The notes beneath the pieces are model-generated. The model had not been told where the DNA came from, searched no databases, and saw nothing but the letters and a program-made list of their open reading frames with translations. Positions 1 to 41,265 of a DNA stretch of 64,000 bases are shown one piece after another. The stretch covers positions 1 through 64,000 of the IMG/VR virus record IMGVR_UViG_3300030041_000009. One strand, written 5' to 3'. Position 1 is the first letter of the stretch, and every line of letters begins with the position of its first letter. Both the position numbers and the translations under genes were made by a program.

Positions 1-264
1 GTTTGTTTCATATTTTTTTAAATTGTTTAATTTTTGTTTTCTTTCAAATTTCAATGATGTTTCAAATAATCCTATATAATATATTTGATATGGTTCTTCT
101 TTTAATCCAACACGTATAATTGAATTGTCTACTATTGAATTGACTAATTGATCTACAGTATAAATTTCATTAAAATTTAATGTTTTTGGTACACCCATTT
201 CTTCAAATATATTTGTAGGTTGTTTAAGTACAATTTTATCACCAATTTTCAAAGATGTTATCAT
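1..264 (-). CDS. Small KOW/SH3-like hypothetical protein with RxxKLxxL C-terminal tag (runs off the window edge)
   Basis: Own translation MITSLKIGDKIVL...FERKQKLNNL; no stop before position 1. Confidence 0.6.
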   Translation of the reverse strand, partial: MITSLKIGDKIVLKQPTNIFEEMGVPKTLNFNEIYTVDQLVNSIVDNSIIRVGLKEEPYQIYYIGLFETSLKFERKQKLNNLKKYETN

Positions 265-275
265 TATTATATCAT

Positions 276-530
276 TTAGCATTCAAATTTTTCTTTTTCA
301 TCTATTTCATTTACATCACAAAAATGAGTTTTTAATACATATAATGCTTTATTAAAATTATTTTCAGTAGTATCTATAACATCTTTATATTCTGATGAAC
401 TATCAGCAAATAAAATTGTCCAACCATTTTCACCTGCTTGAATTGTTACTGTTAATTGTCCAACACCAACTTTAAAGCTTTTACTTTTTTTTACCTCACT
501 TGAAGGCATCATTCCAAAAAATCTATTCAT
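276..530 (-). CDS. Hypothetical phage protein
   Basis: 84 aa ORF in a co-oriented run. Confidence 0.6.
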   Translation of the reverse strand: MNRFFGMMPSSEVKKSKSFKVGVGQLTVTIQAGENGWTILFADSSSEYKDVIDTTENNFNKALYVLKTHFCDVNEIDEKEKFEC

Positions 531-547
531 ATTATTTATTTTTAAAA

Positions 548-967
548 TTAGTCCATCTCTGAAATTTCATCTTCTGAAATTTCAATACAATCAATATCTT
601 TTCTACAATCTTCAAGAAAAATATGAATAAATGTTTCATTTTTTCTTGGCATAATACCTCTTACTATAGTATGTCCATTTTTATTATAATGTTTCCAAAT
701 AGGAACATTAAATTTATCAAATTTCCAATCTGATTTTTCATATGATTCAAAAATTATTGGTTTTAAATCATTTTGTTTTCCTACTCTATTAAATCCATTA
801 GGAAGTCCTAATAATATATGCCCTATTCCAAATATCATAGTTCCTATTACATGTTTTCCACATCCAACTCCTGCTATTGTATTAGGTTCAAAACATTTAA
901 TGTTTGATCCACATACGCAACCAGGACATTGATATTCTTGAATTGCTAATTTAAATTTTTTTTCCAT
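548..967 (-). CDS. Cys-rich hypothetical protein
   Basis: CPGCVCG and CGKH, possible metal binding. Confidence 0.6.
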   Translation of the reverse strand: MEKKFKLAIQEYQCPGCVCGSNIKCFEPNTIAGVGCGKHVIGTMIFGIGHILLGLPNGFNRVGKQNDLKPIIFESYEKSDWKFDKFNVPIWKHYNKNGHTIVRGIMPRKNETFIHIFLEDCRKDIDCIEISEDEISEMD

Positions 968-1230
968 TATTTATTTTAATAAATTTTTAATTTTTTCAGG
1001 TATTTTGTTATTATTTATTTTTTTTAAATTTTTTATATAATGATCATATGATATTTTTTCATCAATACATCTCTTAATTTGATTATAAAATGTATCAATT
1101 ATTTCATCTGGTATTAGTTCTAAGTAATTATAAATCATAATTTTTAATTATTATCATTGGGTATAATATTATATATTTCATCTAATAATTTATATAAATC
1201 TTTTTCAGTTTTCAATAATTTTTTTTCATA

Positions 1231-3135: not shown

Positions 3136-3242
3136 ATTGATGAATTAATCCGCTGATTTTCTTACTGTAAATCCTATCTTATAAGCGGAATTTATTACCA
3201 TTTGGATATATTTATTTTTATCCTATTTACTGATTCATCAAT
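3136..3242 (+). ncRNA. Candidate structured 5' leader (three-way junction)
   Basis: Pairings 3136-3145/3233-3242 (10 bp), TCCGCT/AGCGGA and GGATA/TATCC. Confidence 0.3.
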
Positions 3243-3261
3243 AAAAAAACAATTTAAAGAC

Positions 3262-3732
3262 ATGAGAAAAATTTTACTAGGCATAATAATGCTATTCGCT
3301 TTTAGTGTATATTCAAATACTCAAAACATTACAACAAGATTTATTGATAAATATAATGCATTAACTATATCATTAAGCAACGAATATAAAATCCCTGCTA
3401 GCGTAATTCTTTCAATTTCAATATGGGAAAGTGGTTCTGGAACAAGTAAATTGAGTAGAACTAAACATAATTATTTTGGAGTTAAACAAGGAAAACATTA
3501 TAGAAGTTATGAAAATGATTCTATATCATTTAGGCATTTTTGTGAGTTTACTTCAAAAAGAAAATATTATTCTAAATTAATAAATAATAATGTTACAGAT
3601 TATAATATATGGGTACATAACATTCAAAGAGGTGGATATTCGCAAACAAAAAATTGGGGTAAACATATCGTTGACATGATTAAAATATACAATTTAAATA
3701 AAATTGATAATCAATATGTTTTTATTGATTAA
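3262..3732 (+). CDS. GH73 glucosaminidase (FlgJ-like peptidoglycan hydrolase) with signal peptide
   Basis: IPASVILSISIWESGSG, HNYFGVK, GGYSQ; hydrophobic N-terminus MRKILLGIIMLFAF. Confidence 0.85.
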   Translation: MRKILLGIIMLFAFSVYSNTQNITTRFIDKYNALTISLSNEYKIPASVILSISIWESGSGTSKLSRTKHNYFGVKQGKHYRSYENDSISFRHFCEFTSKRKYYSKLINNNVTDYNIWVHNIQRGGYSQTKNWGKHIVDMIKIYNLNKIDNQYVFID

Positions 3733-3889
3733 TTTGAAAATTATTTAATTTATTGAGTTTTTCAATTCTATCATCTTTCAATTTTTTTCTTTCTGCTTCT
3801 CTATCATATTTATATGATAGTTTTGCGTTTGAAAAACTTGGATCTGCTACTAAATCATAAGTAAATAGTTTATTTAAAATTATTTTCAA
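3722..3889 (-). CDS. 55 aa mini-protein: prohead-protease-like motif plus RxxKLxxL tag
   Basis: Own translation (TTG start): MKIILNKLFTYDLVADPSFSNAKLSYKYDREAERKKLKDDRIEKLNKLNNFQINQ. Confidence 0.6.
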   Translation of the reverse strand: MKIILNKLFTYDLVADPSFSNAKLSYKYDREAERKKLKDDRIEKLNKLNNFQINQ

Positions 3890-4181
3890 TTGATTTTAAT
3901 TTCTTTTTTCTTAAATGCTTAACATATTCATTTGGAAAATTATCATAGTCTAATACAGGTTTATCAGATGCTTTTTTTATCATATCTAATTGCCATTGTA
4001 TAGATTCTATTGGATCCTCACATTCACTTTCATATGAAAAAATGTTTATTGAATTTTCTGTACAAGATTCAGGTATATCACTTTCATCATTGTAATATAC
4101 TTCATAAACACCAAATTCGACTTCAGAGTCAAAATCTGTTACCATTCTTTTTGCTAAAATTCTATAATTCCAATACGACAT
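3870..4181 (-). CDS. Phage protein (WNYR type) with RxxKLxxI tag
   Basis: MSYWNYRIL...YEVYY...LRKKKLKSI. Confidence 0.7.
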   Translation of the reverse strand: MSYWNYRILAKRMVTDFDSEVEFGVYEVYYNDESDIPESCTENSINIFSYESECEDPIESIQWQLDMIKKASDKPVLDYDNFPNEYVKHLRKKKLKSIENNFK

Positions 4182-4247: not shown

Positions 4248-5691
4248 CTATTGTATCTAATTTAATTAATTTGTTTGTTTTTATAGCTGATCGTATGTCA
4301 AACTTATCAGAATGACAACCATTTTGAAATGGTACTTTTTTTCTCCATAAGAATTCGTCTGATATAATATTTTCAAATGATTTTCTCAAAATATACTTCA
4401 AGTGTTTTCCTTTACCGTTATTTTCATCACGATATTTTGGAGGTATTCTTAAACAAAAATTCACAAAATTATAATCAGCAAATGGAGTTCTTGCTTCAAT
4501 TGTACCTCCATACATCATAGATTTATTTAATGTACTCAGATTTTTATGATTTACATTTTTAACTAATGATATTCTTCTGTTATGATATTTTGTTTCATCA
4601 TTCCAGCACCACCTTTTAACATCATCATATGATCCAAATATTTCATCACTAACATCTCCACCAAATACTACTTTAAATCCTCTATTTGATATTTCTTTAG
4701 CTAATAATATTTGTGCAATAGCAAATGATAATTGAATATAATTTTCACTTTCTATCGCATAAATTGTTTCTTGCAATTTTTCTTTCATTACATCAAATGG
4801 AATATCAATAATAACTAATTTTATATTATTTTCTTCTGAGAATTTTTTTGCAAAATATAAATCATCTTTTAATATTTTTTTTGAATTTGTGGTGCCAGAT
4901 ATATTTATAACAAAACTTGTAATATTTTGTATTCTTTTAGATAATAAATATGTTATTAATGTAGAATCTATTCCACCACTTAATATTGTGCATATGGGTA
5001 CATCTGATACTAATTCATTATCAATAGCGGCATTTAGTAATCTTCTTATATTCGTTGTATAATAATTTTCACCTTTGTCAATTTTGTCATAATTAATATT
5101 ATCAAATGTAAAATATTTTGACATTTTTAATTCATTAGTATCTAAAAAATATTCTAATACTGTACCAGGCTGAACATCACAAATATTATCATTGGTATCA
5201 AAACATTTTTTTTCACTGGCAAATATCAGTTTACTATCATACTTATAATGAAATGGTAATCTTCCAATATAATCCCTACCTAAAACCAATTTATTTTTAA
5301 TTTTATCCAAGATACAAAAACAAAACATACCGTCTAATGATGACATAAATTTTATTAAATCGTCAGAATATTCTATATAAATTAATAATAATAATTCTAC
5401 ATCTGATTTATAATTATTAATATTGTATTTTTTTCTCAAATATGAAAAGTTATCAATAGTTCTATTAAATAATTCACCGTTAAAAACAATAACATAATTA
5501 TCATCTTTACTATGAAATGGCTGATTTGAATAATCTGACAAATCAACAATAGATAATCTATTATGACCCATAAATATATTTTTATATTCGTATATTTCTT
5601 GATAATCTCTTCCTCTGTGCTTAATTTTATCTAATGATATCTGAATATCTTCTTTAGATCCGAAACCATTTCCACCTACAATTCCACACAT
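4234..5691 (-). CDS. asnB: Asparagine synthetase B-like glutamine amidotransferase
   Basis: MCGI Ntn start, HRG, HNRLSIVD, FNGE, LSGGIDS PP-loop, SDEIFGSY, EARTPF. Confidence 0.85.
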   Translation of the reverse strand: MCGIVGGNGFGSKEDIQISLDKIKHRGRDYQEIYEYKNIFMGHNRLSIVDLSDYSNQPFHSKDDNYVIVFNGELFNRTIDNFSYLRKKYNINNYKSDVELLLLIYIEYSDDLIKFMSSLDGMFCFCILDKIKNKLVLGRDYIGRLPFHYKYDSKLIFASEKKCFDTNDNICDVQPGTVLEYFLDTNELKMSKYFTFDNINYDKIDKGENYYTTNIRRLLNAAIDNELVSDVPICTILSGGIDSTLITYLLSKRIQNITSFVINISGTTNSKKILKDDLYFAKKFSEENNIKLVIIDIPFDVMKEKLQETIYAIESENYIQLSFAIAQILLAKEISNRGFKVVFGGDVSDEIFGSYDDVKRWCWNDETKYHNRRISLVKNVNHKNLSTLNKSMMYGGTIEARTPFADYNFVNFCLRIPPKYRDENNGKGKHLKYILRKSFENIISDEFLWRKKVPFQNGCHSDKFDIRSAIKTNKLIKLDTIEKSE

Positions 5692-5858
5692 AAATTTAGT
5701 TTGTTTAATTTATTTCTTCTTGTAACATTCTTTATTGCTATATCAATAAGCTTGTTTGTGATATCTTTTTTATAATATCTGAAATAATAATCTCGTTTAA
5801 GTAATTCTAATTGAGATATACTAGCTGTCATTAATTTATTAAGAATACCATCTTCCAT
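5676..5858 (-). CDS. Small protein with RxxKLxxL tag
   Basis: Ends RRNKLNKLNL. Confidence 0.55.
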   Translation of the reverse strand: MEDGILNKLMTASISQLELLKRDYYFRYYKKDITNKLIDIAIKNVTRRNKLNKLNLCVEL

Positions 5859-8305: not shown

Positions 8306-8363
8306 AAAAAATCCAGAACTAATCTGGATTTATTGTTTATTTAAAAAGATTAATATTATTTAA
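8306..8363 (+). repeat. Imperfect direct repeat (terminator plus flank); second copy at 11471-11524
   Basis: AAAAAA(T/G)CCAGAACTAATCTG...TTTATTTAAAAAGATTAATAT(T/C)ATTTAA in both copies. Confidence 0.7.
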
Positions 8364-8602
8364 CTTATTTCATATTCACTTTTTATTTTTAATAACTTAA
8401 GTTTTCTCTGTTCTTGAAGTGTACAGAAATATTCATAGAAATTAGGATAATCTCCTACAAATTTAGTTTTATTAAGAGAAAATATTCCAAAATTATACAA
8501 ATAAACTATATAATCATCATAAAATATAATATAATAATATTCACCTTCAATATAATTATTATATGCCTTTTTACAAATATATTTTGTATTTTTATTTAAC
8601 AT
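8360..8602 (-). CDS. Small protein with RKLKLLKI tag
   Basis: Ends FCTLQEQRKLKLLKIK. Confidence 0.6.
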   Translation of the reverse strand: MLNKNTKYICKKAYNNYIEGEYYYIIFYDDYIVYLYNFGIFSLNKTKFVGDYPNFYEYFCTLQEQRKLKLLKIKSEYEIS

Positions 8603-10537: not shown

Positions 10538-11452
10538 ATGAAATATGTAAAAACATTTGAATTATATCGTGACTATGATATAGATTCTGTTGGTAATCTT
10601 GCTGTTGGTAATCTTGGTGGCTATCCTAATAATAAAAAACAATTATTAGCTTATATAGAAGCTGGCGGCGATATTGATGTTATAGATAAAAATGGAAACA
10701 CTCCTTTAATTAGATCTGTTACAAATAGCAAGAGTGAACTGACAAATATTTTAATTAAAAGTGGAGCAGATTTAAATATTCAAAATAATAATGGAGAAAC
10801 AGCATTAATGAAAGCAACAAAAAATAGAGATGTCATGAGATACATTAGTTTATTGATAGATGCTGGTGCAGATTGGAATATAGAAAAATATGACAAATTT
10901 TTATCATCTGTAGAAAATCCTATCTCTTATAGAGACAAATTATTAGCTAATATTGATTTTTTTGAGATGTTAACACCAAAATATCAAGAATTAACAAAAG
11001 AAAAATATCCAGAAAAATATAACTATTATTTAAGTAAAAAAGAAAGTTCAAATTCAAATTCAAATTCAAATTCACAGAATAATAAAGGAGATACAGCATT
11101 AATTTATGCAGTGAAAGATAGAAACATTAAACGTGTAGAATCTTTAATAAAATCTGGTGCAAATTTGAATATACAGAATAATAAAGGTGAAACAGCATTA
11201 ATTATTGCTGCTCGTTATCTAAATATGAATATAATTTATAAATTGATAGAAGCTGGATCAGATTGGAATATAACTAAATATAAAGATAATACTATTCTTT
11301 CATTTAATTCTATTAATGGTGGTAAACCTTATACGCCGAGAGGTAAATTTTATGAAGAAAAAGATTTTTTTGAAATATTATCACCAAAATATCAAGAAAT
11401 ATTAAAAGAGAAATATCCAGAAAAATATGCTAAATATTTGGCAAAAAAATAA
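10538..11452 (+). CDS. Ankyrin-repeat protein, internally duplicated, CTS-like leader
   Basis: GNTPLI/GETALM/GDTALI/GETALI repeats; duplicated DFFExLxPKYQExxKEKYPEKY; (AATTCA)n linker. Confidence 0.85.
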   Translation: MKYVKTFELYRDYDIDSVGNLAVGNLGGYPNNKKQLLAYIEAGGDIDVIDKNGNTPLIRSVTNSKSELTNILIKSGADLNIQNNNGETALMKATKNRDVMRYISLLIDAGADWNIEKYDKFLSSVENPISYRDKLLANIDFFEMLTPKYQELTKEKYPEKYNYYLSKKESSNSNSNSNSQNNKGDTALIYAVKDRNIKRVESLIKSGANLNIQNNKGETALIIAARYLNMNIIYKLIEAGSDWNITKYKDNTILSFNSINGGKPYTPRGKFYEEKDFFEILSPKYQEILKEKYPEKYAKYLAKK

Positions 11453-15783: not shown

Positions 15784-17655
15784 TTAGTGAACTTCTTCGA
15801 AATCCACGTCATTTATGTTTTCAGATTCATCTTTATTAGTTGATGTACTTTCATTAGTTGATTGATTATTATTCTCTTCGTAAAGCTTAGAACTTATATT
15901 TTGCCAAGTATCATTCAATTCTTTACTATATTTATCAATATCATCCAGATTTTGAGTTTTGTGAGCTTCTTTAAGATTATCAAGCTTAGAATTCAATTCA
16001 GTTTTATTTGATTCATTCAATTTATCGCCATATTCTTCAATTTGTTTTTCAGTTTGAAAAATCATAGCATCTGCTTGATTAAGTTTATCAATCTTTTCTT
16101 TTTCTTTTTTATCTGATTCCGCATTTTGCTCAGCTTCCATCTTCATTTTTTCAATTTCTTCTTTTGTTAAAGATGATTTACCTTCTATTCTAATATCATT
16201 AGATTTACCAGTTGCTTTATCAACTGCTTTAACTGTCAAAATTGAATTGCTATCTAAACTGAATGTAATTTCAATCTGTGGTGTGCCTCTACGAGCAGGT
16301 GGAACATCAAGTGAAAATGTGCCTAAATGTTTATTGTTTTTGTATAGAGGTCTATCTCCAGTACAAACATTTACCTGTACGCTTGGTTGTGAATCTGATG
16401 CTGTACTAAATACTTGACTCTTAGATGTCGGGATCGTAGTATTTGCGGGAATCATGATAGTAGCAATTTCACCCATTGTCTCAATAGAAAAGTTCAACGC
16501 TGTTACATCAAGTAATAATATATCTGTATTATCTCCATTTAATACAGAACCTTGAATAGCGGCTCCAGATGCAATTGCAGTATCAGCATTTAGAGATTTA
16601 TTTGCTTTTTTACCAAAGTATTTTTCAATACTTTCTACCAAATAAGGTATCCTGGTGCTACCCCCCACTAAAATTATATCATCAAATTGTGAAATTTGTT
16701 TGTTACTTTTCTTAAGTGATGACATAATTAATTTCATTGTTTTATCAACATAAAATTGAATTAATTGCTCAAATTTAGCACGAGTAATAATTTTATTTAA
16801 ATGTCGTGGTTGTCCATCTACCGCCGTGATGTACGGTAAGTTGATTTCAGTTTGTGTTACACTAGATAATTCTATTTTTGCTTTTTCTGCGGATTCAGTA
16901 ATACGTTGTAGTGCCATTGAATCTTTACGAATATCTACACCAGTTTCTTTTAAAAATTCTTCAGAAACATAATCAACAATTGCATCATCAATCAAATTTC
17001 CGCCTAAATCTAAATTACCGTCTGTTGATAGTACTTCATATAAACCATCTGATACCGTAATTGCTGAGCTATCCGTTGTACAACCACCAGCATCTATGAC
17101 CATATATAGTTTATCTGTCTTATCTTTAATATTTAATGCTGCTGCTGTTGGCTCTGAAATAATTCTATCTACTTGAAACCCAGCTATTTCACCTGCTACC
17201 TTAGTGCAACTTCTTTCATCCGAATTGAAATAAGCTGGAGTCGTTATAATTACCGAGTCTATTTTACAAGATAGATAATCTTCTGCTGTTTTTTTCATTT
17301 TTTGAAGAATCATTGCTGAAATTTCTTCTGGCGAATATACTCTATCACCAATTTTTACTGCTGCCTTACCATTATTATCAACTATATCATAAGGACGTTT
17401 TAGATGTTTAACTTCATCATATGTTCTACCAATAAGTCGTTTAATATTAAAAATGGTATTTTTAGGATTTAATGCTGCTTGGCGTTTAGCAGACTCTCCA
17501 ACTTTAATTTCTCCTGTTTTTTGATCAAATGCTACGATAGAAGGAGTTGTTAAATTTCCTTCTGCGTTTGGTATAACAACTGCTACACCTCCCTCAATGA
17601 TGCTTACTACCGAATTGTATGATCCAAGATCTACTCCAATAATTTTTTTACTCAT
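15784..17655 (-). CDS. dnaK: Hsp70 chaperone DnaK (divergent)
   Basis: GVDLGSYNS, TPSIVAF, TTPAYFN, EPTAAA, LVGGSTRIP, PQIEITF, C-terminal DVDFEEV. Confidence 0.95.
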   Translation of the reverse strand: MSKKIIGVDLGSYNSVVSIIEGGVAVVIPNAEGNLTTPSIVAFDQKTGEIKVGESAKRQAALNPKNTIFNIKRLIGRTYDEVKHLKRPYDIVDNNGKAAVKIGDRVYSPEEISAMILQKMKKTAEDYLSCKIDSVIITTPAYFNSDERSCTKVAGEIAGFQVDRIISEPTAAALNIKDKTDKLYMVIDAGGCTTDSSAITVSDGLYEVLSTDGNLDLGGNLIDDAIVDYVSEEFLKETGVDIRKDSMALQRITESAEKAKIELSSVTQTEINLPYITAVDGQPRHLNKIITRAKFEQLIQFYVDKTMKLIMSSLKKSNKQISQFDDIILVGGSTRIPYLVESIEKYFGKKANKSLNADTAIASGAAIQGSVLNGDNTDILLLDVTALNFSIETMGEIATIMIPANTTIPTSKSQVFSTASDSQPSVQVNVCTGDRPLYKNNKHLGTFSLDVPPARRGTPQIEITFSLDSNSILTVKAVDKATGKSNDIRIEGKSSLTKEEIEKMKMEAEQNAESDKKEKEKIDKLNQADAMIFQTEKQIEEYGDKLNESNKTELNSKLDNLKEAHKTQNLDDIDKYSKELNDTWQNISSKLYEENNNQSTNESTSTNKDESENINDVDFEEVH

Positions 17656-17658
17656 AAT

Positions 17659-18230
17659 TTACTTTAATTTTTTTTTTGAATTATTAATTTTTTTTAATTT
17701 TAATTTTCTATATTCTTTTAGTGATATGAATCTTTTAACATCTAATGAAAATGAACTATTACCAAATTCTTCAAATGATAAATTTATATATATGTAATCT
17801 AAATTACCAAAAGTTTTATAATAATCTGTTGTAAAATAATCATTATCTGATGAATACCACACTCTTCTGACTGTTAATATATCATATTTTTTAATATTAA
17901 TATTATCTTTTTCAAATAATTTATTATTTTTTAAAAGTTTCAAATAATCATCAAATGAAAATATATTATAATCTACAATTACTACTTTATCTCCTGATTT
18001 AAACACAACTTTTCAAGTTTTAATTTTCTATATTCTTTTAGTGATATGAATCTGTCTGCTCTGAAATTTCCTCCTATATTAATTAATTTTATATATTGAT
18101 TAAGCATATAATAATGACCATAACTTTCTATTTTATACGTAGAATATTTTTTCAAATTCTTATATGGTTCAAATGTTTTAGTATCATTACTATCATCAAT
18201 ACAAACTATTATATTTCCTTCTTTAAACAT
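17659..18230 (-). CDS. Two small FKxGD (KOW/SH3-like) proteins with an identical RFISLKEYRKLKL tail
   Basis: ORFs 17659-18006 and 17982-18230 share about 35 bp of identical DNA at the tail. Confidence 0.7.
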
Positions 18231-18327
18231 AATTAATATATTAATTACTTTTTATTATTATTCAAATGTTATGCCAAACCAAAAATAATGTCAATTTGTC
18301 ATATAATATGACACAATGACATCATAA

Positions 18328-18607: not shown

Positions 18608-18611
18608 GTTA

Positions 18612-20062: not shown

Positions 20063-22420
20063 TTAAAATGTTTCACTAATTTCTTTCAATTTATTTTTTC
20101 TTTCAATTCTTTTACTAATAAAAAATGTTTTAATAATTATATAGCAATCAACGTTAACATCAGTCATTATTAATATAGAACTATTTTTTTCATCTTCATA
20201 AATGTTTAATATTCTATATTCTTTACCTACTGTTATTAATAAATCATTTGTATTATCATTTTTTATACAAATAGCTAATTCTCCAACTTTAAATTTGTTG
20301 TTTGATTTCATTTATTTTCATTTTTCTAAGTTTTTGTTTACTAATGAAATAAGATTCAGGTACAAAAAAATTATAATTATTATTACATATCATATACATA
20401 TTACTTGAATTACAATTACTTAATTGAAGTACTTTATATTCGTTATTTATTGTCAATAATAGTTCAGTAAAAGTATCATTTTTTATACAAATAACTAATT
20501 CACCAACTTTAAATTTGTTTTTTGATTTCATTTATTTTCATTTTTCTAAGTTCTTTTTTACTAGCAAAACAGGATTTAGGTACAAAATAATTAATATTTA
20601 TATCGCATGTTACGCATATATTATCAGTATTAAATATTCCCATTGCTGATATTTTATATTCTTTATTTATTGTCAATATATTTGAATATTCAAAGGTTTT
20701 TATACAAACAATGGTATCATTTGTTTTGAACATATTTATTTAGTTTTTCAAGTTTAAATTTTCTTAAATCTTTTAAATTCTTTTTATTTATAAAATATGA
20801 ATCAGGTAACGGCATTATAAGATTATTATCGCATATTATATTTAAATATCCGCTATTTTTATATATCCATAATATTTTATATTCTTTATCTACTGTTATT
20901 AATTGATTGCTATTTTTTATACAAATAGCATAATCATCAATTTCAAATTTATTATTTTTAACTAATTTCATTTAGTTTATTTAATTTTAATTTTCTATAT
21001 CCTTTTACACTTATAAATCTCGTCATATCATAAACTGAATATCCATATTTATTTTCAATTTCATCTAATATATATGAAGTGCTTTCATATCGACTACTAG
21101 TATCATCAAGTGATTCATAACAATTTCCATCATCTCCCCAATATGATAGAATTTTTTTAATTGTGTAAGTTTTATTTATTTCTAATGGATTTATTTTATG
21201 AAATTCTAACATATATGATACGAAATCATAAAAAACATAATCTTGTTTAGGTTCATTATCTATACAAACAACTACATCACCTATTTTGTACATATTTATT
21301 TAGTTTTTTTAATTTTAATTTTCTGATTGATTTAATATCAGTAAAAAAACTTATTGGTACAAATTGGCTGAATTTTTTAGTGTCACTTTTTACTACAATT
21401 TTATTTTGAAAATACCAATCAATATATTCAATTTTATATTTTTTACCTATTGTTAAATGTTGATCCCAATAATCATTATCATCAATTTTTACACAAGTGA
21501 CAATTTGGCCAATTTTAAAATCATAATTTGTCAATTCATTTTCTTTCATTTAGTTTATTTAGTTTAACTTTTCTTAAAATTAAAATTAATTGATTTTCGG
21601 GTAAAGATAATAATCTAAATCTCATATTTGTATTCACTATATGATTATAATGAATAGTTACAACATAATTATCATTATTACAATCATATCTTATTTCACG
21701 TATATAAAAATCACTGTCTGGTATTTGTTCATCATAATATTTTTTCAGTTCTCTTAATAACAATAAATATGATTTGGTATCTAAGTTTGAAACTATATTG
21801 GTTGGCATAATTTATTTAGTTTATTTAGTTTATTTATTCTGGATATATTATTTAATTTGCATTCAGATAAATAATGATGTTCAGTAGTATAAAAATATCC
21901 TGATAATCTATATTTTTTTCTCATTTTAACAGAAATAACATACTCAGAATTATTATGATAACTTTTTCTAAATCCTGATATATCATATACAGTATATTTA
22001 AAATTATCATTTAGTATATTTGAATAATATATTTTTAATTCTTTGAGTAAATTTTCATATGATTGCGTATTTTCTTTATATTTATACATTATTAATTTTT
22101 TCTAATTTTTGTTTTCTTAAAAAAATATTATGTTCTTTATCATCATTAAATTGATATAATATATCATTAACTACTTCATATTTAGAGTATGTAATAACAA
22201 ATGGCAAATAATCATCAAATTTAATATAGAAAGAATATTCACTTGACATAAAAATTGAAAAACTTAAATTAAATTTCTCAGTCATTGCAATTATTGCGCC
22301 AGATCTAATTAATTCATTTTTTTCATTCAATTGAATATATTTATCCATAGAATAACAGTTTTTAGGCATACCCCATAACCCGTTATCTTGTTTTTTAGAA
22401 TTTATTTTTATTATTTGCAT
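20063..22420 (-). CDS. Tandem array of nine small overlapping ORFs, all ending in the RxxK[LI]xx[LI] tag
   Basis: ORFs at 20063, 20289, 20509, 20717, 20958, 21277, 21536, 21793 and 22082; the first six are [FY]KxG[DE]-xxCI paralogues; near-identical junction DNA at about 20282-20332 and 20502-20552. Confidence 0.75.
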
Positions 22421-22932: not shown

Positions 22933-23093
22933 TTTAAATTATTTATTTTTTCGATTTTTTCTTTTCTTTTCTTATTGAGTTCTTTTCTTTTAATTTCTCT
23001 CATAAATTCGTCATCAAATATAATATGTTTAGGATATAAGTTTGCATAATCCATATTTACTATCTGATATTCAAATTTATAATTTTTCTTCAT
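22929..23093 (-). CDS. 54 aa mini-protein: PolB motif A-like segment plus tag
   Basis: Own translation: MKKNYKFEYQIVNMDYANLYPKHIIFDDEFMREIKRKELNKKRKEKIEKINNLK. Confidence 0.6.
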   Translation of the reverse strand: MKKNYKFEYQIVNMDYANLYPKHIIFDDEFMREIKRKELNKKRKEKIEKINNLK

Positions 23094-23095
23094 AA

Positions 23096-23830: not shown

Positions 23831-23846
23831 AAAATAAATAAATATA

Positions 23847-25879
23847 ATGATGAGAGCAATATGTAAGCTAGATTACGGACAGTTTGAAAATAACAAAACC
23901 TACAATTATTCATGCACTAACGACAATAAATTCCACGTTGATGGTCAATATGGAAAAACAGAATTTAATAAAAGACAATTTAATGCATTATTTACATTAG
24001 AAAGAACAAAAAACCCAAACAAATCATTTAATTTTTAATATCTAATTTATGAAATTTAATATCGGAGATAATGTTATATTCATAAATAATTCTAAAACTA
24101 TTTATGCTTGGGATCTTGTTGATTATAAAATCTATAAAATTGAGAATTTTTCAATTCGTTCGTCTGAATTTATGTATTCGGTGAGTGATAATGATAGTAA
24201 TACAACTCAAAGTTGGTATTTTGAATGTGATTTTATTTCATTGCAAGAATATAGAAAAATTAAATTAAACGAAATAAAACAATTATCATGAGAAGATTTA
24301 GTAAAAAATTAAAAAATATATTTAATTCTATTAATCCATATTACGAAATTAATAAAGAATCCGATAGATTTCAAGAACTCAGAATAAAATTGAATGAAAA
24401 TCGATTAGATTATATAATAAAAGAGTTTGAAAGAATAGAAAATATGAGTGATGAAGAAAGAATAGAATATAAAAAAAATTTATTGAAAGAAGAAGCAAAT
24501 AATATAATTGATAAATTAGAATCAAATTCAGAATTATATAAAGAATATAATAATATTATGAGGAGAAAGAAAATTAAAAAATTAGAAAGTAATGAGTAAT
24601 TTAGTAGAACATGCAAAAAGAGAATTTCTTAAATTAGGTTATAAACCAATTGATAAATGCGAAAATGATCCAAATAAATGGATACAAGAAAATATATTAG
24701 AATTACTTGAAATATTTTCTAAACAAGGTCATTCTGGATTTTCAGCATCATATGTACTTAGTTATTTTAATAAATTGGCTAATTTTGAACCAATTGCTCC
24801 GATTATGTGTACCGATGATGAATGGAATGATATAGCAGATGAATGTTATCAAAATAATCGTTGTTCTGCAGTATTTAAAGAAAAAATTGATAGTAATCCA
24901 TATTATTTGGATGCTATTATTTTTGTTGATGAAAATAATTCATCTTTTACTGGTAGAGCATATAATAATAGTCATGATAGTATAACAAGTAGGCAAACAA
25001 TTAAATTACCATTTACACCTAAACGTTTTTATGTTGATGTAGTTTATTATAATGATGAAAATCATATTAAAGATGAATCCCAATTAAAAGAAGTTTGGAA
25101 ATATTATGAGCATCAAGAAACTAAGTCATATATTAGATTACAAAAATTAAAATCAATAGAATGAAAATTGGAGATGTTCAAGTTTATTTAGGAGATACTA
25201 ATATGTATTATACTAAAAATAAAAAATATTATGTATATAGGATAAATTCTCATTTTATACCTGGAACTATTTGTGGACATATAATGAATGATATAGGAGA
25301 TAGTGTTTATTTTCGTGATGATGATATCGACAGGAATTGGATAGATTTAAAAAAATATAGAAAAGAAAAAATTAATAATTTAAATAATATTTATGAAAAA
25401 AACTTTGAATGATTTTGATTATAGTTTTAAATTTCCTGATAATGATTTTAATAATTTATCGTTAGAAATGCTACAAAAATGGAAAACATTAATCAATCAA
25501 GATAAAATAAAATTAAAAAAAGAAGAAAGAATTGCTAAATTAAATGAAATAAATTCTAAATAAAATGACAATACAAAATTATAAGAAAAAATATTTAATA
25601 TGTAAAGATGATTTTGGTAAAAATATTTATGTTGGAGATACTGTGGAATTATTTTGTCCACTTGAATTTTCAACTACATGGAAATCAATTGTTTATTGGA
25701 GTATGTTATCTGGAGCGTGGGTAGATTTTCCTACTATATTTATTGATACTCCAAATCCTCAAAGAATTTTATATTCATTACTTAATCAGCAAGAATATAA
25801 TATTTGTGATGTAGATAGTGATATTCCAATAAAATATAAAGGATATTGTAAAAAAATAAAATCTTTTTATACAAAATAA
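23847..25879 (+). CDS. Run of small ORFs (23847, 24049, 24288, 24592, 25161, 25393, 25565); five carry the C-terminal tag
   Basis: Tails YRKIKLNEI, RRKKIKKL, RLQKLKSI, RKEKINNL, RIAKLNEI. Confidence 0.65.
25393..25563 (+). CDS. 56 aa mini-protein: LxKWxxLI segment plus tag
   Basis: Own translation: MKKTLNDFDYSFKFPDNDFNNLSLEMLQKWKTLINQDKIKLKKEERIAKLNEINSK. Confidence 0.55.
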   Translation: MKKTLNDFDYSFKFPDNDFNNLSLEMLQKWKTLINQDKIKLKKEERIAKLNEINSK

Positions 25880-31150: not shown

Positions 31151-31876
31151 TTAATTTTTTTTATATTTATTTAATATAGATAATATTTGTTTATTATATT
31201 TATTAGAATAAAAATAATCATTTTTATTTACAATATCAAATACATTAAGTCCATCATCATTAGGTTCTGGTTTAAAATTATAGTCTTTAGCATATAAATT
31301 TGCACCTTTCTGTAAAAGTTCATCAATAATTTTCAATCTCATATCAACATTATGATTTTCACCAGAAAGTATATGATCTTTTCTTTTTAAATTTTCGACT
31401 GCTAGTATTAATGGAGTAGATCCATCTCTACTTATAGAATTAATATCAATATTAGGCTGTTCTAATAATAGTTCAAATACCTTAAATCCTTCTTCATTTA
31501 AACGTTTCTCATACACAATACTAGATAGTGGGCTAAAATTTGCATGTCCTTTTAAATTAATATCAGCTCCTTTATCAATTAAATACTTACATACATCATA
31601 ATTCTGATATGAACTTGATAAATTAAGTATATTATCACCAGCCAATTCAACATTTATTATTTCAGGATGCGCATCAATAAGACTTATAACATTATTTGTT
31701 TCTTTATTCATAAGATATGTTCTACACTCATAATAATAACTATGAATATTTTTTTCTAAATCTTTTTTCTGTTTTCTGCCGTCACTGTATTTCGTGAATG
31801 TTGATGTATAATCATCACCATAAAAATGTTCATCATTTGTAAATCCTTCAAATGATTTTAAATGTTTATTTTTCAT
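31151..31876 (-). CDS. Ankyrin-repeat protein with CTS-like leader
   Basis: MKNKHLKSFEGF; LIDKGADIN, GSTPLILAV, LLQKGANL. Confidence 0.8.
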   Translation of the reverse strand: MKNKHLKSFEGFTNDEHFYGDDYTSTFTKYSDGRKQKKDLEKNIHSYYYECRTYLMNKETNNVISLIDAHPEIINVELAGDNILNLSSSYQNYDVCKYLIDKGADINLKGHANFSPLSSIVYEKRLNEEGFKVFELLLEQPNIDINSISRDGSTPLILAVENLKRKDHILSGENHNVDMRLKIIDELLQKGANLYAKDYNFKPEPNDDGLNVFDIVNKNDYFYSNKYNKQILSILNKYKKN

Positions 31877-37726: not shown

Positions 37727-38578
37727 TTATTTTTCTTTTTTAAGTTTAACAGCATCTTTAATACTAAATTTTTTAATTACTAGAGGATCATCAGGAGATT
37801 CAATATAAACATCTTTACCGTCAATTCTATTCACACGTCCATTCATAATATCATTATCTATGTATACACCAGCATTAAGAATTGATCTTTCTTTTGGTGT
37901 TTGTGGATCGATAACATTAAAGTCTGATATTTTTTTAACCCATTGTGCTTTTACTGCACCTATGCCGAAGTTTGGATCAGATTTAGGTTCTTCTTCTTGA
38001 CCTAACATAGTATATTTAGGCATTTCATTTGATTCTGTTATTTCATCAATTTTTAAATAATCATACAAATCTTCAACTTCTTTATCACTAATTGAATTTA
38101 ATGCATCTTCATCAATATCTGAGTTACTATTAAGTATTTCTTTTTTTAAAGTTTCAATATATTCACTATATTCGTCATATGCAGGTTTAGCTTCTACAGA
38201 ATCTCTACTATAATATTCTTTTATTACATCTTTTGCTACATCAGTTCTTTTTGTCTTTGTTACATTTTCTTCTTTCCAATTATCATCAAAATCTTTAAAT
38301 TTTAATACATTTTCAATATTTTTCATATTACTATAATTATTTTCTTTTATTGATTGATTTACTAATTTAGATTTGAACGCAATTGTTTGTAGTTTACTAT
38401 CCTTTGCAGCAAATTCATCCCAGCTTTCTATATGATGATCAACTGCATTACCTATATATTGAAGATTTGGAATGCCTTTATTCATTCTATCATTGGTTGT
38501 TAAATCTCCGATATCTTTTCCTTTGGTCTCTGCTCTTAATTTTTTTAATTGTCGAATACTAGTTTCTCTTGGTAACAT
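37727..38578 (-). CDS. Hypothetical late protein with TKRTDVAKD motif
   Basis: ORF; late-type motif upstream. Confidence 0.65.
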   Translation of the reverse strand: MLPRETSIRQLKKLRAETKGKDIGDLTTNDRMNKGIPNLQYIGNAVDHHIESWDEFAAKDSKLQTIAFKSKLVNQSIKENNYSNMKNIENVLKFKDFDDNWKEENVTKTKRTDVAKDVIKEYYSRDSVEAKPAYDEYSEYIETLKKEILNSNSDIDEDALNSISDKEVEDLYDYLKIDEITESNEMPKYTMLGQEEEPKSDPNFGIGAVKAQWVKKISDFNVIDPQTPKERSILNAGVYIDNDIMNGRVNRIDGKDVYIESPDDPLVIKKFSIKDAVKLKKEK

Positions 38579-38649
38579 ATTAAGTTGTTATTTTTTATGT
38601 ATATATTAAAAACCGTTTTCCGTTTTTTTATAAAAAAATGTTGTGAAAA

Positions 38650-40498
38650 TTAATTCACAACATTATCATTTTTCTTTTCCATTATTTTTATTAATTCAAG
38701 AATTTTTGTTTTTTCATTAAATGTTTGAATTTCTTTATCAGAAATTTCTAATGGTTTAAAATGTAAAACTATTTCACCTCCTGCTAATTTGTGTAATTTA
38801 CCTTCAACAGTATGCCAATCTAAAATTCTGTGAATTCCTTCTATATGTGAAATTACATTTTCATTTTTTGATATTTTAATAGCATGTTTTTTATTTCTTT
38901 TATAAATTTCAATCGAAGGACATCCTTGATTACTAATAATACCAATCTCTTTAGAATTTTCATCAAATAATTTAGAATAAATAGTGAACTCTATGTTACA
39001 ACGCTTTGTTGTATATCCAAGTGATATACATATATCTTCCATAAAATTAATATTAAATACATCATTTATGACATAGTATTCCATTATACCATATTTTTCA
39101 ATTATTGGATTTTTAATATTATTATTTTTTCCTATCCATTCTTCTTTTGTCATATTTGTCATTTTACCAACAATCATAATCAGTTATATTTTCTTCTTTT
39201 TTTAAAAGATTATCAATTATAATTACTGCAGTTCCTATTCCTGTTGGAGTAAATCTATAACTAAATCTACCGCCTATTGCTGTTTTCGGTGATTTTTTCT
39301 TTTTCTCTTGTTTTTTGATCCATTCATTTGCAGATTTTTCTTCTTTTTCATTTAAATAATATGTTATCATAATTTAATATATTTTTAATTGTTCAAGTTT
39401 TTGCTTACGAATATCTTGTTTACAAAAATGATGATAATCTATTAATCTAATAGTAATTAATTTCATTCTATTTTTTGCAAGTTCTATATCAAAATATTTT
39501 ACTGAATAACAAGCTAAATCATCAGTATACGTAGATAATTTTATATCTTTTATTATATTTTCACCTAATGAATTTATAGATTTTAAATAATTTTTAACTG
39601 ATGTATTTTTCATTATTTTAATTTCTTAATTGTTTTAATTTTTATATCTATCATTGATATCAATCTATTTATTTCTTGAGAATGAATGCCACCCTGTGAT
39701 ATTTTAATTAAATATTGAATATTTATATTATATAAATCTTCTAATATGGTAATTGTATCAGAATTATTTATCAAAGTTTCAAGTTCTGTACTATCATTCC
39801 AAAAAATTTTATTTTTCCTTGTAGAATTAGTAGTAATTATTATTAATGAAGAAAATAAAAAAGATATATAAAGCGCCAATTTAAGCATAATATTAACTGA
39901 AATATCTTTATCTATAGTAATAAAATAAACCATCGAATAAATAATAATAAAATATATCACGAATGATATACCAAAAATAATCCATAAAGAACATTTACTA
40001 AAAAATTTAGTTATTGCTTTCATAATTTTATTTTTTTAAACTGAAATAATATAGAATTAACCATGATAAAACTAATATAATAAAAATAATTAACAAATAA
40101 TATTTACTAAAAAAATTATTTATTGCTTTCATAATTTTATTTTTTAAATGTAAATACTAAAAAGTTTATAAACCTATGCTTATGAATAATATCAAACAAT
40201 TACTTTTAAATTTATTTGAGAAAATAGAATACATATTTAAAAATATAGTAAATTCGCTAATCAATTCTTTAAATTTTATATCTGCATCTTCTTGACTCAT
40301 TTTATTATCAAGTACATAATTTTTAATATCAATCATTCTATTTGATAAACTAAATACTTTTTCGACCATTTTGTCAGAAAAAACTCCAATCAAATCAAAT
40401 GTTTCCATTAATTTGTTGAAAGATTTATAATTATCAATATTATTATCATTTATCCAAGAATTTTCTAAATTAAAACTATAGTCTGATTTCATTTCCAT
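38650..40498 (-). CDS. Five hypothetical ORFs (38650, 39164, 39374 tagged, 39613 two-TM, 40166)
   Basis: Co-oriented packed ORFs. Confidence 0.6.
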
Positions 40499-40565
40499 TT
40501 ACATTTGTTTGTTTAATTAATAATGTACAAAGATAATAAAAATAATATGTAGTTCATTACATTTT

Positions 40566-40793
40566 TTATTTATTTAATTTTTTTTTAATGTTTTTTGAAT
40601 TAGATATTTTTTCAAGATTTTTTAATTTTTTAATTCTTTCTTCCTTTTTCTTTCTTTTGTTTTCGTATTTTTTTAATATTTCTGCAGTTTTAAAATTAAT
40701 AATTATAAAATCTCCTGATCCTGAAAGTTTTTTATTATGTATCAGATTAGATGCATCTAATAATTTTTGATAAAGTTCATTATTAATCGACAT
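40566..40793 (-). CDS. 75 aa mini-protein: major-capsid-like segment plus tag
   Basis: KLLDASNLIHNKKLSGSGDFIIINFKTAEIL...EERIKKLKNL. Confidence 0.6.
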   Translation of the reverse strand: MSINNELYQKLLDASNLIHNKKLSGSGDFIIINFKTAEILKKYENKRKKKEERIKKLKNLEKISNSKNIKKKLNK

Positions 40794-41265
40794 TTAATTT
40801 TTTTAATTTTTTGCTTCTTATATATTTAACAATATTAGAATTTTTATTAATTATATCATTACTAATATAACGAATACAATTTTCTTCTACTTCACAATAA
40901 TTATTGTAACAATTTTTTAATTTACATGCATCATATTTATCATAAGAATCCCATTCAATTCTTTTATTCGGACAATTTTCATCAATAAAATTAATAAATT
41001 TTTTCTTATTTTCAATATTAATATATCTATTCTTTGATGTTTTTATATCTGTTTTTATTGTGAAAGTTTTTAATGCACTTGATGATATAGTTAATTCTAT
41101 TTCAGCCTCATTATCTCTTATGGTGTATCCCGTTATTGAATCATAATCAATTATTGTGAATTCATGATAACAACTAAATTTACAATAACTTAAAGTTATT
41201 TCAGTTAATGATACAATTATATCTCTTACTTTAAATTCTGGATTTAAATAAATTGGAATTACCAT
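40783..41265 (-). CDS. Cys-containing hypothetical protein with tag
   Basis: Ends YIRSKKLKKL. Confidence 0.6.
   Translation of the reverse strand: MVIPIYLNPEFKVRDIIVSLTEITLSYCKFSCYHEFTIIDYDSITGYTIRDNEAEIELTISSSALKTFTIKTDIKTSKNRYINIENKKKFINFIDENCPNKRIEWDSYDKYDACKLKNCYNNYCEVEENCIRYISNDIINKNSNIVKYIRSKKLKKLNVD

What the first reader, a model, noticed from the sequence alone, without database searches (positions are those of the whole stretch)
1..41265. Portable C-terminal RxxK[LI]xx[LI] tag on about 25 unrelated small proteins
Seen in ORFs at 1, 3722, 3870, 5676, 8360, 17659, 17982, nine ORFs within 20063-22420, 22929, 24049, 24288, 24592, 25161, 25393, 39374, 40566 and 40783. N-terminal domains vary (KOW/SH3-like, helical, core-protein fragments) while the tail stays constant. 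The tag is not seen on enzymes or on CTS-type genes. Inference: a variable-bait plus constant-docking architecture, analogous to F-box adaptors, binding one hub such as a protease, chaperone, RNA polymerase or membrane. It could alternatively be a degron or localisation signal.
Basis: partly seen in the sequence, partly recalled or inferred. Interest (0 to 1): 0.82.

Follow-up and report, generated by a model that had tools for sequence, protein, structure and literature searches.

The report
Shared C-terminal tag on phage proteins
About a quarter of the genes in this stretch of a huge peat-bog phage, from many unrelated protein families, end in the same short helix (R-K-x-K-L-x-K-L/I-N), which behaves like a portable address label whose receptor is still unknown.

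Summary
All 25 ORFs named carry R..K[LI]..[LI] within about 15 residues of the C-terminus. That is 23 of 100 called genes against 0.37 expected, with 1 hit in 17,288 internal positions.

The window is a Mahaphage-like huge phage (GC 21%) from peat metagenomes. Three related contigs carry the tag on 54 of 134 genes. A 642-kb relative carries a variant that keeps only R0, K3, phi4 and phi7. Two other huge phages carry none.

Selection acts on the protein, not the DNA:
- Codon use at motif positions equals genome usage.
- The 27-nt coding motif never occurs untranslated.
- Orthologues at about 50% identity keep the tag.
- In the Tad3 family, 85 tagged homologues sit on one side of the tree and 35 untagged homologues end just before the tag.

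AlphaFold2 models the tag as a helix on two different folds. The invariant residues lie on one face and the variable ones on the opposite face.

Best reading: a portable docking or address helix for one common receptor. The receptor and the consequence are unknown, and the phage Hsp70 test gave no answer.

"Unrelated" is overstated: 11 of the 25 are paralogues of one SH3-like family and 2 belong to a second family.

The parts
19..42 (-). Tag RKQKLNNL of truncated ORF 1-282 (SH3-like family A)
3746..3769 (-). Tag RIEKLNKL of ORF 3722-3889. This is the last gene of its strand run. It converges on the + strand gene 3202-3732, so there is no downstream gene to couple to.
3888..3911 (-). Tag RKKKLKSI of ORF 3870-4181 ('WNYR' family, phrog_21321). 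In the model the domain spans residues 1-85 and the tag helix residues 90-101.
5697..5720 (-). Tag RRNKLNKL of ORF 5676-5858
8384..8407 (-). Tag RKLKLLKI of ORF 8360-8602. No adjacent same-strand downstream gene was called.
17686..17709 (-). Tag RKLKLKKI of ORF 17659-18006 (family A), immediately upstream of Hsp70
18006..18029 (-). Tag RKLKLEKL of ORF 17982-18230 (family A). The AlphaFold2 model has an SH3-like barrel plus helix 64-78.
20078..20101 (-). Tag RKNKLKEI of ORF 20063-20311 (family A). The gap to the next gene is 56 nt.
20304..20327 (-). Tag RKMKINEI of ORF 20289-20531 (family A)
20524..20547 (-). Tag RKMKINEI of ORF 20509-20733 (family A)
20741..20764 (-). Tag RKFKLEKL of ORF 20717-20971 (family A)
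20973..20996 (-). Tag RKLKLNKL of ORF 20958-21293 (family A)
21301..21324 (-). Tag RKLKLKKL of ORF 21277-21549 (family A)
21551..21574 (-). Tag RKVKLNKL of ORF 21536-21808 (family B)
21817..21840 (-). Tag RINKLNKL of ORF 21793-22089 (family B)
22094..22117 (-). Tag RKQKLEKI of ORF 22082-22420 (singleton)
22944..22967 (-). Tag RKEKIEKI of ORF 22929-23093 (singleton)
24253..24276 (+). Tag RKIKLNEI of ORF 24049-24291 (family A)
24561..24584 (+). Tag RRKKIKKL of ORF 24288-24599 (helical singleton)
25135..25158 (+). Tag RLQKLKSI of ORF 24592-25164. The N-terminal domain matches Pfam Tad3 (anti-Thoeris), residues 2-121, E 1.4e-35.
25359..25382 (+). Tag RKEKINNL of ORF 25161-25412 (probable family A)
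25528..25551 (+). Tag RIAKLNEI of ORF 25393-25563 (singleton)
39386..39409 (-). Tag RKQKLEQL of ORF 39374-39613. Arg is encoded by CGT here, not AGA.
40614..40637 (-). Tag RIKKLKNL of ORF 40566-40793, 15 residues from the end
40795..40818 (-). Tag RSKKLKKL of ORF 40783-41265. A 60%-identical homologue keeps R-Y-I-K-V-K-K-L-N.
15784..17655 (-). Phage Hsp70/DnaK (context only). A tag-bearing gene lies directly upstream here and in three related contigs. It was tested as the receptor without result.

Best explanation
The tail is a portable C-terminal docking helix, a short linear motif. In this clade its consensus is phi-K-x-phi-R-K-x-K-[LI]-x-K-[LI]-N followed by 1-10 free residues. During the evolution of a lineage of huge (Mahaphage-like) phages it was appended to many different small, soluble accessory proteins.

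The folded N-terminal domain is the variable working part. Examples are a Tad3-type anti-Thoeris inhibitor and SH3-like modules. The tail projects as an amphipathic alpha-helix. Its conserved face (phi-4, phi-1, R0, K3, L4, L7, N8) binds a groove on one common receptor, so that many different effectors are brought to one place or machine.

Shown here:
- The motif is real and positioned at the C-terminus.
- It is selected as protein.
- It is modular (gained within a family).
- It is modelled as a helix with single-face conservation.
- Its core is conserved across two divergent phage lineages.

Inferred:
- That the conserved face binds one common protein receptor.
- What follows from binding. 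I rank timed turnover by an AAA+ protease or adaptor about equal to loading into the capsid or another phage structure, and both above chaperone recruitment.
For: (1) Enrichment. There are 23 tails against 0.37 expected, and 1 internal hit in 17,288 windows. Off-frame matches are at background level.

(2) The feature is clade-wide: 78 of 234 genes in the window plus three related contigs. SH3-like family A has 2,243 representative clusters, and 120 of its 130 small top hits carry the tag.

(3) Selection is on the protein.
- Codon use for R, K, L, I and N at motif positions matches genome-wide use, and L and I interchange.
- A PWM of the 27-nt coding site finds 71 true sites plus 9 others in 124 kb on both strands. 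Seven of the 9 trace to C-termini of ORFs my gene call missed or truncated. None was confirmed as an untranslated leader.
- Asn at +8 is as conserved without an overlapping downstream gene (18/28) as with one (26/50).

(4) Purifying selection in orthologues. In the WNYR family at about 50% identity, R91, K93 and K94 are at least 90% conserved. In the Tad3 family, 85 of 85 tagged homologues keep the core. A 60%-identical homologue of ORF 40783 also keeps it.

(5) Modularity.
- Thirty-five Tad3 homologues end at ...EYYxx without the tag. Presence or absence needs only 2 changes on the tree.
- A distant WNYR homologue lacks it.
- Multi-repeat SH3 proteins lack it.
- Two N-terminal domains have different predicted folds.

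(6) Helix with one conserved face.
- AlphaFold2 gives a helix at 90-101 on the WNYR fold and at 64-78 on the SH3-like fold.
- The information profile peaks at 90-100 degrees per residue.
- The least conserved positions (-2, 2, 5, 9) lie opposite R0, K3, L4 and L7.

(7) The LR756502 variant (31 tails) keeps R0, K3, phi4 and phi7. It replaces K1 by D/N/E and N8 by L/G, so the net charge is not what is conserved.
Against: - No receptor was found. The only complex prediction (phage Hsp70 with a tagged protein) returned 'no answer'.
- More than 100 different clients per genome would compete for one receptor.
- In the window clade the tag is associated with unusually long (8-23 nt) overlaps with the next gene (odds ratio 4-5, p about 1e-5). 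This leaves room for a role in cis during translation.
- Positions 0, 3, 4 and 7 were fixed by the search pattern. The periodicity argument therefore rests partly on selected columns; on the free positions alone the peak is at 90 degrees but weak.
- No expression timing, localisation or binding data exist.
Confidence: 0.55

Rival explanations
1. C-terminal degron. The tag is recognised by a host or phage AAA+ protease or its adaptor (ClpXP, Lon, FtsH), so that a whole class of small early or accessory proteins is cleared on schedule. This is a special case of the docking model with a defined receptor.
For: The position near the C-terminus is tightly kept: R0 lies 9-18 codons from the stop and 10-12 codons in LR756502. 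From my own knowledge, the basic-hydrophobic character recalls ClpX C-motif 2, the MuA C-terminus RRKKAI. Carriers are small soluble proteins in arrays of accessory genes.
Against: - The motif is not at the extreme C-terminus; 1-10 variable residues follow it.
- Helical single-face conservation is not expected for a pore-engaged degron.
- No protease gene was found in the window.
- There are no stability data.
Confidence: 0.15
2. Capsid or virion loading signal. The helix mimics a scaffold-type coat-binding helix, so tagged proteins are packed in the very large head and injected with the DNA.
For: From my own knowledge there is precedent for portable packaging peptides: the T4 capsid targeting sequence, encapsulin C-terminal cargo peptides, and the basic C-terminal coat-binding helix of P22 scaffolding protein. 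One carrier belongs to the Tad3 anti-defence family, a class of protein that profits from being present at entry. The tag is restricted to small proteins (0 of 38 over 250 aa).
Against: - The tagged genes sit in dense accessory-gene arrays co-oriented with RtcB and Hsp70, not with structural genes.
- The number of different carriers is very large.
- There is no conserved protease site before the tag: Glu at -2 occurs in only 18 of 78.
- No capsid or scaffold gene was available to test.
Confidence: 0.1
3. Non-specific electrostatic anchor. The tag would be a basic amphipathic helix that tethers proteins to nucleic acid or to the membrane rather than to one protein.
For: The mean net charge of the tail is +4 in the window clade, against +0.5 for the last 16 residues of untagged small proteins. 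Tag and TM-like segments hardly co-occur (3 of 78 against 19 of 118).
Against: - The LR756502 variant has D/N/E at +1 and little net charge, yet keeps R0, K3, phi4 and phi7.
- R0 and K3 lie in the middle of the hydrophobic face, which is unlike MinD- or FtsA-type membrane helices.
- R0 and K3 are nearly invariant rather than any basic residue.
Confidence: 0.1
4. Cis-acting nascent-chain element. While still in the ribosome tunnel at the stop codon, the peptide would slow termination and promote re-initiation at the overlapping start of the next gene, in hosts that do not use Shine-Dalgarno pairing.
For: - Tagged genes overlap the next gene far more often than untagged small genes (46/73 against 25/88 at 150 aa or less; odds ratio 4.3, p 1.4e-5).
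- The overlaps are long, 8-23 nt rather than 1 or 4 nt.
- The motif lies 2-18 codons before the stop.
- Action in cis removes the competition problem.
- The predicted hosts are Bacteroidetes (PMC7162821).
Against: - Twenty-eight of 78 tags have no overlapping downstream gene. Six of these have no adjacent same-strand gene at all, including the convergent ORF 3722-3889.
- In LR756502 the association is weak (odds ratio 2.1, p 0.07).
- The spacing to the stop varies by 9 codons.
- Asn +8 is equally conserved without overlap.
- The long overlaps are also explained if the residues after the motif are simply unconstrained.
Confidence: 0.07
5. Nucleotide-level signal (promoter, translation-initiation region, recombination site) or a compositional artefact of a 21% GC genome.
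For: The coding sequence is A/T-rich and lies just upstream of the next start in 50 of 78 cases. A tail-plus-next-start junction module is duplicated (20701-20764 against 21261-21324, 81% identity).
Against: - Codon use at the motif equals genome use.
- The DNA PWM finds no confirmed untranslated or out-of-frame copy.
- Off-frame peptide matches are at background level.
- Two AT-rich relatives have none.
- The distance to the next start ranges from 16 to 365 nt.
Confidence: 0.02

Closest known systems
T4 capsid targeting sequence (CTS) of internal proteins IPI-III and Alt
   Same: A short portable peptide on unrelated phage proteins that addresses them to one phage structure. It occurs in a T4-related lineage.
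   Different: The CTS is N-terminal, about 10 residues long, removed by the prohead protease at L/I-x-E, and present on a handful of proteins. Here the tag is C-terminal and helical, sits on a quarter to a half of the genes in these regions, and has no conserved cleavage site.
Encapsulin C-terminal cargo-loading peptides
   Same: A C-terminal 10-20 residue tag, transferable between cargo proteins, that docks to one receptor (an HK97-fold shell).
   Different: The sequence type differs (Gly/hydrophobic-rich, not R-x-x-K-L-x-x-L). There are few cargos, each next to the shell gene. No shell gene is linked here.
ESCRT-III MIM1 helix binding the Vps4 MIT domain; SspB XB peptide and the MuA C-terminus binding ClpX
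   Same: A C-terminal amphipathic or basic peptide with a few invariant Arg/Lys/Leu residues spaced i, i+3, i+4, i+7, used by several proteins to dock on an AAA+ machine.
   Different: The consensus differs. There is no AAA+ partner identified here, and the scale is hundreds of clients rather than a few.
RxLR (oomycete) and PEXEL (Plasmodium) effector motifs
   Same: One short motif shared by hundreds of fast-evolving, otherwise unrelated small effector proteins arranged in expanding gene families. It works as an address label.
   Different: These are N-terminal, eukaryotic and linked to secretion. The resemblance is analogy only.
F-box adaptor proteins
   Same: A variable target-binding part plus a constant docking part.
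   Different: The F-box is a folded domain of about 45 residues with a known receptor (Skp1). Here the constant part is a 12-16 residue helix with an unknown receptor, and there is no evidence that carriers act as adaptors.
DnaK/Hsp70 client motif (Leu-rich core flanked by basic residues)
   Same: The composition is basic plus Leu. A phage Hsp70 gene sits next to tagged genes in four genomes.
   Different: DnaK binds 4-5 consecutive hydrophobic residues in extended form. Here Lys alternates with Leu and conservation has helical periodicity. Hsp70 also occurs in the tag-free LR756501. The complex prediction gave no answer.

Membership tests
T4-type capsid targeting sequence | N-terminal position, about 10 residues | tested here: not met
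   The motif is always within about 15 residues of the C-terminus.
T4-type capsid targeting sequence | Removal by the prohead protease at L/I-x-E next to the tag | tested here: not met
   Glu at -2 occurs in 18 of 78 tails, and [LIV]-x-E is mainly confined to the SH3-like family.
Encapsulin cargo-loading peptide | C-terminal tag on cargo | tested here: met
   C-terminal position.
Encapsulin cargo-loading peptide | Encapsulin shell gene in the same operon | tested here: not met
   No such gene appeared among the window's annotated proteins.
ClpX C-motif-2 (MuA-like) degron | Basic-hydrophobic residues at the extreme C-terminus, dependent on ClpX | tested here: inconclusive
   The basic-hydrophobic character is present, but 1-10 further residues follow. 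Dependence on ClpX is not testable here.
DnaK/Hsp70 binding motif | Core of 4-5 consecutive hydrophobic residues flanked by basic ones, bound in extended form | tested here: not met
   The hydrophobic residues are spaced i, i+3 and separated by Lys, and the segment is modelled as a helix.
DnaK/Hsp70 binding motif | Physical binding to the phage Hsp70 | tested here: inconclusive
   Complex prediction gave score 0.00 with the verdict 'no answer'.
Membrane-targeting amphipathic helix (MinD/FtsA type) | Uninterrupted hydrophobic face flanked by basic residues | tested here: not met
   R0 and K3 lie in the centre of the face formed by phi-4, phi-1, L4 and L7. The variant in LR756502 has little charge.
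Tad3 (PF25185), for ORF 24592-25164 only | Match to the family profile above the curated cut-off | tested here: met
   122.1 bits against a cut-off of 27, residues 2-121. Binding of ThsB by this copy was not tested. The family's function is taken from PMC13728456.
SH3-like small phage domain (phrog_4927 and relatives), for family A | Small beta-barrel fold | tested here: met
   The AlphaFold2 model has five strands and mean pLDDT 88.5. There are weak Foldseek matches to SH3, Tudor and KOW folds, all with E of 0.085 or more, and weak PHROG matches to the N-terminal half only.

The most novel reading that the evidence does not exclude
A lineage of huge phages uses a proteome-wide C-terminal address code. 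One 9-residue helical motif, added to a hundred or more different small effector proteins per genome (thousands of protein clusters in metagenomes), routes them to a single, still unknown receptor. The receptor could be a phage-built compartment, the capsid interior or a dedicated unfoldase. It co-evolves with the tag, which would explain the clade-specific variants R-K-x-K-L-x-K-L-N and R-D-x-K-L-x-x-I-L.
Probability: 0.35. Interest if true: 0.9.

Novelty: new variant of a known kind. Interest (0 to 1): 0.8.

Why it matters
Huge phages carry hundreds of small genes of unknown function. A shared, transferable tag on a third of them gives a single experimental handle on the whole class. One peptide pull-down could reveal where these proteins go or how they are controlled.

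The tag would also mark candidate effector and anti-defence genes in metagenomes, since one carrier is Tad3-like. It would show how a virus adds new genes to an existing delivery or control route by appending a dozen residues. If the tag proves sufficient for targeting, it could serve as a tool for loading or timing proteins in phage-based systems.

Tried and rejected
- Compositional or AT-bias artefact: rejected.
- DNA or RNA motif such as a translation-initiation region, promoter or recombination site: rejected by codon usage and the PWM scan. The sigma-70 promoter scan of the arrays was uninformative in this AT-rich DNA, with fewer hits than in shuffles.
- One diverged family only: rejected, because Tad3 and WNYR homologues without the tag exist and two N-terminal domains have different folds.
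- Phage Hsp70 as receptor: the complex prediction gave no answer. The synteny is suggestive only, and Hsp70 is also present in tag-free LR756501.
- Protease site L/I-x-E before the tag: not general.
- Canonical coiled-coil heptad: the invariant R0 or K3 would fall in core positions, so I did not pursue it (reasoning).
- Searches with no result: tblastn of family A members against cultured and deposited phages; PDB sequence search; Foldseek against PDB; atlas search with the tail alone; Pfam on larger tagged proteins of related loci and LR756502; literature searches for a described motif.
- Read laying: the many 'joints' had sides of only 20-34 nt. They come from other contigs sharing short tail-coding stretches and are not evidence of cassette rearrangement.

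Full report
What the window is

The window has about 21% GC and is 91% coding under the standard bacterial code. It encodes:
- a split T4-type family-B DNA polymerase;
- Hsp70;
- RtcB;
- an asparagine-synthase-like protein and a glutamine-dependent NAD synthetase;
- a PIN-PhoH protein;
- TnpB;
- ankyrin-repeat proteins;
- GIY-YIG/NUMOD homing endonucleases.

The polymerase is 55% identical to that of the 735-kb 'uncultured phage' LR756501 and 43% identical to that of the 642-kb LR756502. These genomes belong to the Mahaphage clade, whose hosts are predicted to be Bacteroidetes (PMC7162821).

The same phage occurs on contigs of up to 346 kb. It is present in several peat metagenomes.

Check of the observation

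- Among 100 called genes, 23 have R..K[LI]..[LI] ending 12 residues or fewer from the C-terminus.
- One more has it 15 residues from the end, and the truncated ORF at the window's start also has it.
- The rate is 23 per 1,300 tail windows against 1 per 17,288 internal windows.
- The composition of the tails themselves predicts 0.37.
- Of 37 matches in all six frames, 25 are these tails. Of the other 12, seven contain stop codons.

Are the carriers unrelated?

Only partly.
- After removing the tail, 9 ORFs are clearly paralogues of one family with an N-terminal F-K-x-G-D-x-V-x-C-I signature. These are 17659, 17982, 20063, 20289, 20509, 20717, 20958, 21277 and 24049; ORFs 25161 and 1-282 probably belong too.
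- ORFs 21536 and 21793 form a second family.
- About 12 ORFs are singletons.
- ORF 24592-25164 matches Pfam Tad3 over residues 2-121 (E 1.4e-35). Studied members of that family inhibit Thoeris by binding ThsB (PMC13728456).
- ORF 3870-4181 matches phrog_21321 over residues 1-80.

AlphaFold2 models show two different folds.
- ORF 3870-4181 has a beta-sheet plus helix domain, followed by a separate, lower-confidence helix at 90-101 that is the tag.
- The paralogous family has a five-stranded SH3-like barrel, followed by a helix at 64-78 that is the tag.

Foldseek found no significant PDB match for either. The barrel resembles SH3, Tudor and KOW folds weakly.

The tag is a property of a phage lineage

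Orthologues of ORF 3870-4181 from other metagenomic contigs, about 50% identical, keep Y-x-R-K-K-K-L-x-x-I. R91, K93 and K94 are at least 90% conserved. A distant homologue ends in an unrelated acidic sequence.

Three such contigs (GC 24-27%) were fetched with 10-kb flanks. The tag ends 22 of 45, 12 of 34 and 20 of 52 genes, on many different N-termini. Taken together with the window:
- 78 of 234 genes carry it.
- None of the 38 proteins longer than 250 aa carries it.
- Only 3 of 78 carriers have a TM-like segment, against 19 of 118 untagged small proteins.

A profile of the SH3-like family finds 2,243 representative clusters (50% identity level) in public data. Of the 130 small top hits, 120 end in the tag. 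Long multi-repeat relatives of the same barrel do not.

No cultured or deposited phage outside the huge metagenomic genomes matched.

Protein or nucleic acid?

Five results point to selection on the amino acids.
1. Codon choice for Arg, Lys, Leu, Ile and Asn at the motif positions is the same as genome-wide. Leu and Ile, with unrelated codons, interchange at +4 and +7.
2. A weight matrix of the 27-nt coding site, set to recover 90% of true sites, finds only 9 further matches in 124 kb on both strands. All 9 translate to the motif without a stop. I could trace 7 to C-termini of ORFs that my crude gene call had missed or truncated. L005 699 and L007 17638 were not traced to an ORF. None was confirmed as an untranslated leader or an out-of-frame copy.
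3. The distance from Arg to the gene's own stop is 27-54 nt in 77 of 78 cases (one outlier at 69 nt). The distance to the next start ranges from 16 to 365 nt. Six tags have no adjacent same-strand downstream gene, among them ORF 3722-3889, which converges on a plus-strand gene.
4. Asn at +8 is as frequent without an overlapping downstream gene (18/28) as with one (26/50).
5. Related AT-rich genomes lack the motif: LR756501 has 1 of 273 genes in 200 kb, and LR756508 has 0 of 109.

Modular gain

Among the 120 best homologues of the Tad3-like ORF, 85 carry the tag after a short linker. The other 35 stop a few residues after the conserved ...E-Y-Y of the domain.

On a tree built from the domain alone, presence or absence needs two changes. 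One of them appears to be P0256, a tail that reads S instead of L/I at +4. The family therefore gained (or lost) the tag essentially once and has kept it down to about 50% identity.

Array dynamics are visible in two ways:
- fused double units exist in public data;
- a junction module, tail plus start of the next gene, is duplicated at 20701-20764 and 21261-21324.

Anatomy

Counting Arg as 0, the profile in the window clade is:
- -4: L or K
- -3: K
- -1: L, I or Y
- 0: R
- +1: K (57/78)
- +2: variable
- +3: K
- +4: L or I
- +5: variable
- +6: K (46/78)
- +7: L or I
- +8: N (44/78)
- then 1-10 unconserved residues.

On a helical wheel, R0, K3, L4 and L7 fall within a 100-degree arc together with phi-4. 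The least conserved positions (-2, 2, 5, 9) fall together on the opposite side. The information profile peaks at 90-100 degrees per residue. Four of the columns were fixed by the search pattern, which weakens this argument.

A profile search for variants found almost none. Arg at 0 and Lys at +3 are close to invariant.

A second lineage

In 200 kb of LR756502, 31 of 300 genes end in phi-R-[D/N/E]-x-K-[L/I]-x-x-[I/L]-[L/G] followed by only 1-3 residues. The carriers include proteins of 301 and 622 aa.

The core R0, K3, phi4, phi7 is kept. The extra lysines and Asn +8 are not. What is conserved is therefore a specific pattern, not charge. This argues against a purely electrostatic anchor to DNA or membrane and for recognition by a defined partner that differs slightly between lineages.

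By polymerase identity the tag-free LR756501 is closer to the window than LR756502 is. The system was therefore either lost or moved horizontally.

What it most likely does

The best-supported reading is a portable docking or address helix. The variable domain does the work and the tail brings it to one common receptor.

I could not identify the receptor. A tagged gene lies directly upstream of the phage Hsp70 in the window and in all three related contigs. However, the upstream genes are not orthologous, Hsp70 also exists in the tag-free relative, the motif does not look like an extended DnaK client, and the single co-folding job returned 'no answer'.

Degron, capsid loading and chaperone recruitment remain open sub-hypotheses.

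One rival deserves attention. In the window clade, tagged genes overlap the next gene far more often than untagged small genes, and by 8-23 nt instead of 1 or 4 nt (odds ratio 4-5). This could mean that the nascent peptide acts in cis on termination and re-initiation. Three points count against that:
- 36% of tags have no overlapping partner;
- the association is weak in LR756502;
- the long overlaps are expected anyway if the residues after the motif are unconstrained.

Other data

A permafrost metatranscriptome contains identical contigs of 151-161 nt over 23512-23662 and 24589-24871, the latter within the Tad3-like gene. This is compatible with expression but does not prove it.

I found no description of this motif in the searchable literature.

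Verdict

The finding is real, strongly non-random, selected at the protein level, and modular. The kind of thing (a transferable targeting or docking peptide) is known. This motif, its helical form, its scale (a quarter to a half of the genes in these regions and thousands of protein clusters) and its restriction to lineages of huge phages appear to be new. The mechanism beyond 'docking helix' is inference.

Noticed in passing
It could be a decaying or divergent copy.
   Followed up: partly
window 43708-46856 (-), 47278-48492 (+): The T4-type family-B DNA polymerase is split into two ORFs. ORF 45372-46856 holds the exonuclease and the start of the polymerase domain. ORF 43708-45309 matches DUF7487. 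A DUF723 gene sits next door. The arrangement is identical on other contigs.
   Followed up: partly
window 28541-29779 (-): A TnpB/OrfB_IS605 with a Cas12f-like TNB domain lies inside the phage genome.
   Followed up: no
window 51654-52385 (-), 58715-59638 (-): Two GIY-YIG/NUMOD3 homing-endonuclease-like genes. The second lies between a glycosyltransferase gene and the NAD synthetase region.
   Followed up: no
window 20701-20764 and 21261-21324: A 64-nt direct repeat (81% identity) spans the tag of one gene and the first codons of the next. The unit of duplication in the array is therefore shifted relative to gene boundaries.
   Followed up: partly
window 17600-25600; L005-L007: Tagged genes overlap the next gene by 8-23 nt, with the next start placed just after the motif. 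Untagged genes overlap mostly by 1 or 4 nt.
   Followed up: yes
L005 14223-14675, 15985-16374, 16394-16999, 17176-17565; L007 19905-20291: A further tagged paralogue family begins M-K-I-R-x-G-F-V-S-N-S-S-S-S. It has no Pfam match and is absent from the window.
   Followed up: partly
window 15784-17655; L005 7232-9118; L006 1280-3172; L007 3777-5663: The phage Hsp70 is always preceded by a tagged small gene, and the preceding genes are not orthologous. Hsp70 itself has an internal K-E-K-I-D-K-L-N-Q in its C-terminal region, which is probably coincidence.
   Followed up: partly
window 23512-23662 and 24589-24871: Identical short contigs occur in a permafrost metatranscriptome run (X20). They hint that the 23540-23830 gene and the Tad3-like gene are transcribed in nature.
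   Followed up: partly
P0041, P0093 (public proteins found): Proteins of 152-164 aa consist of two SH3-plus-tag units in tandem, each with its own tag. They look like fusions of neighbouring array genes.
   Followed up: no
window 10538-11452 (+), 31151-31876 (-); L006 17060-17551: Ankyrin-repeat proteins are encoded in this phage and a relative. They are peptide-binding modules and so untested receptor candidates.
   Followed up: no
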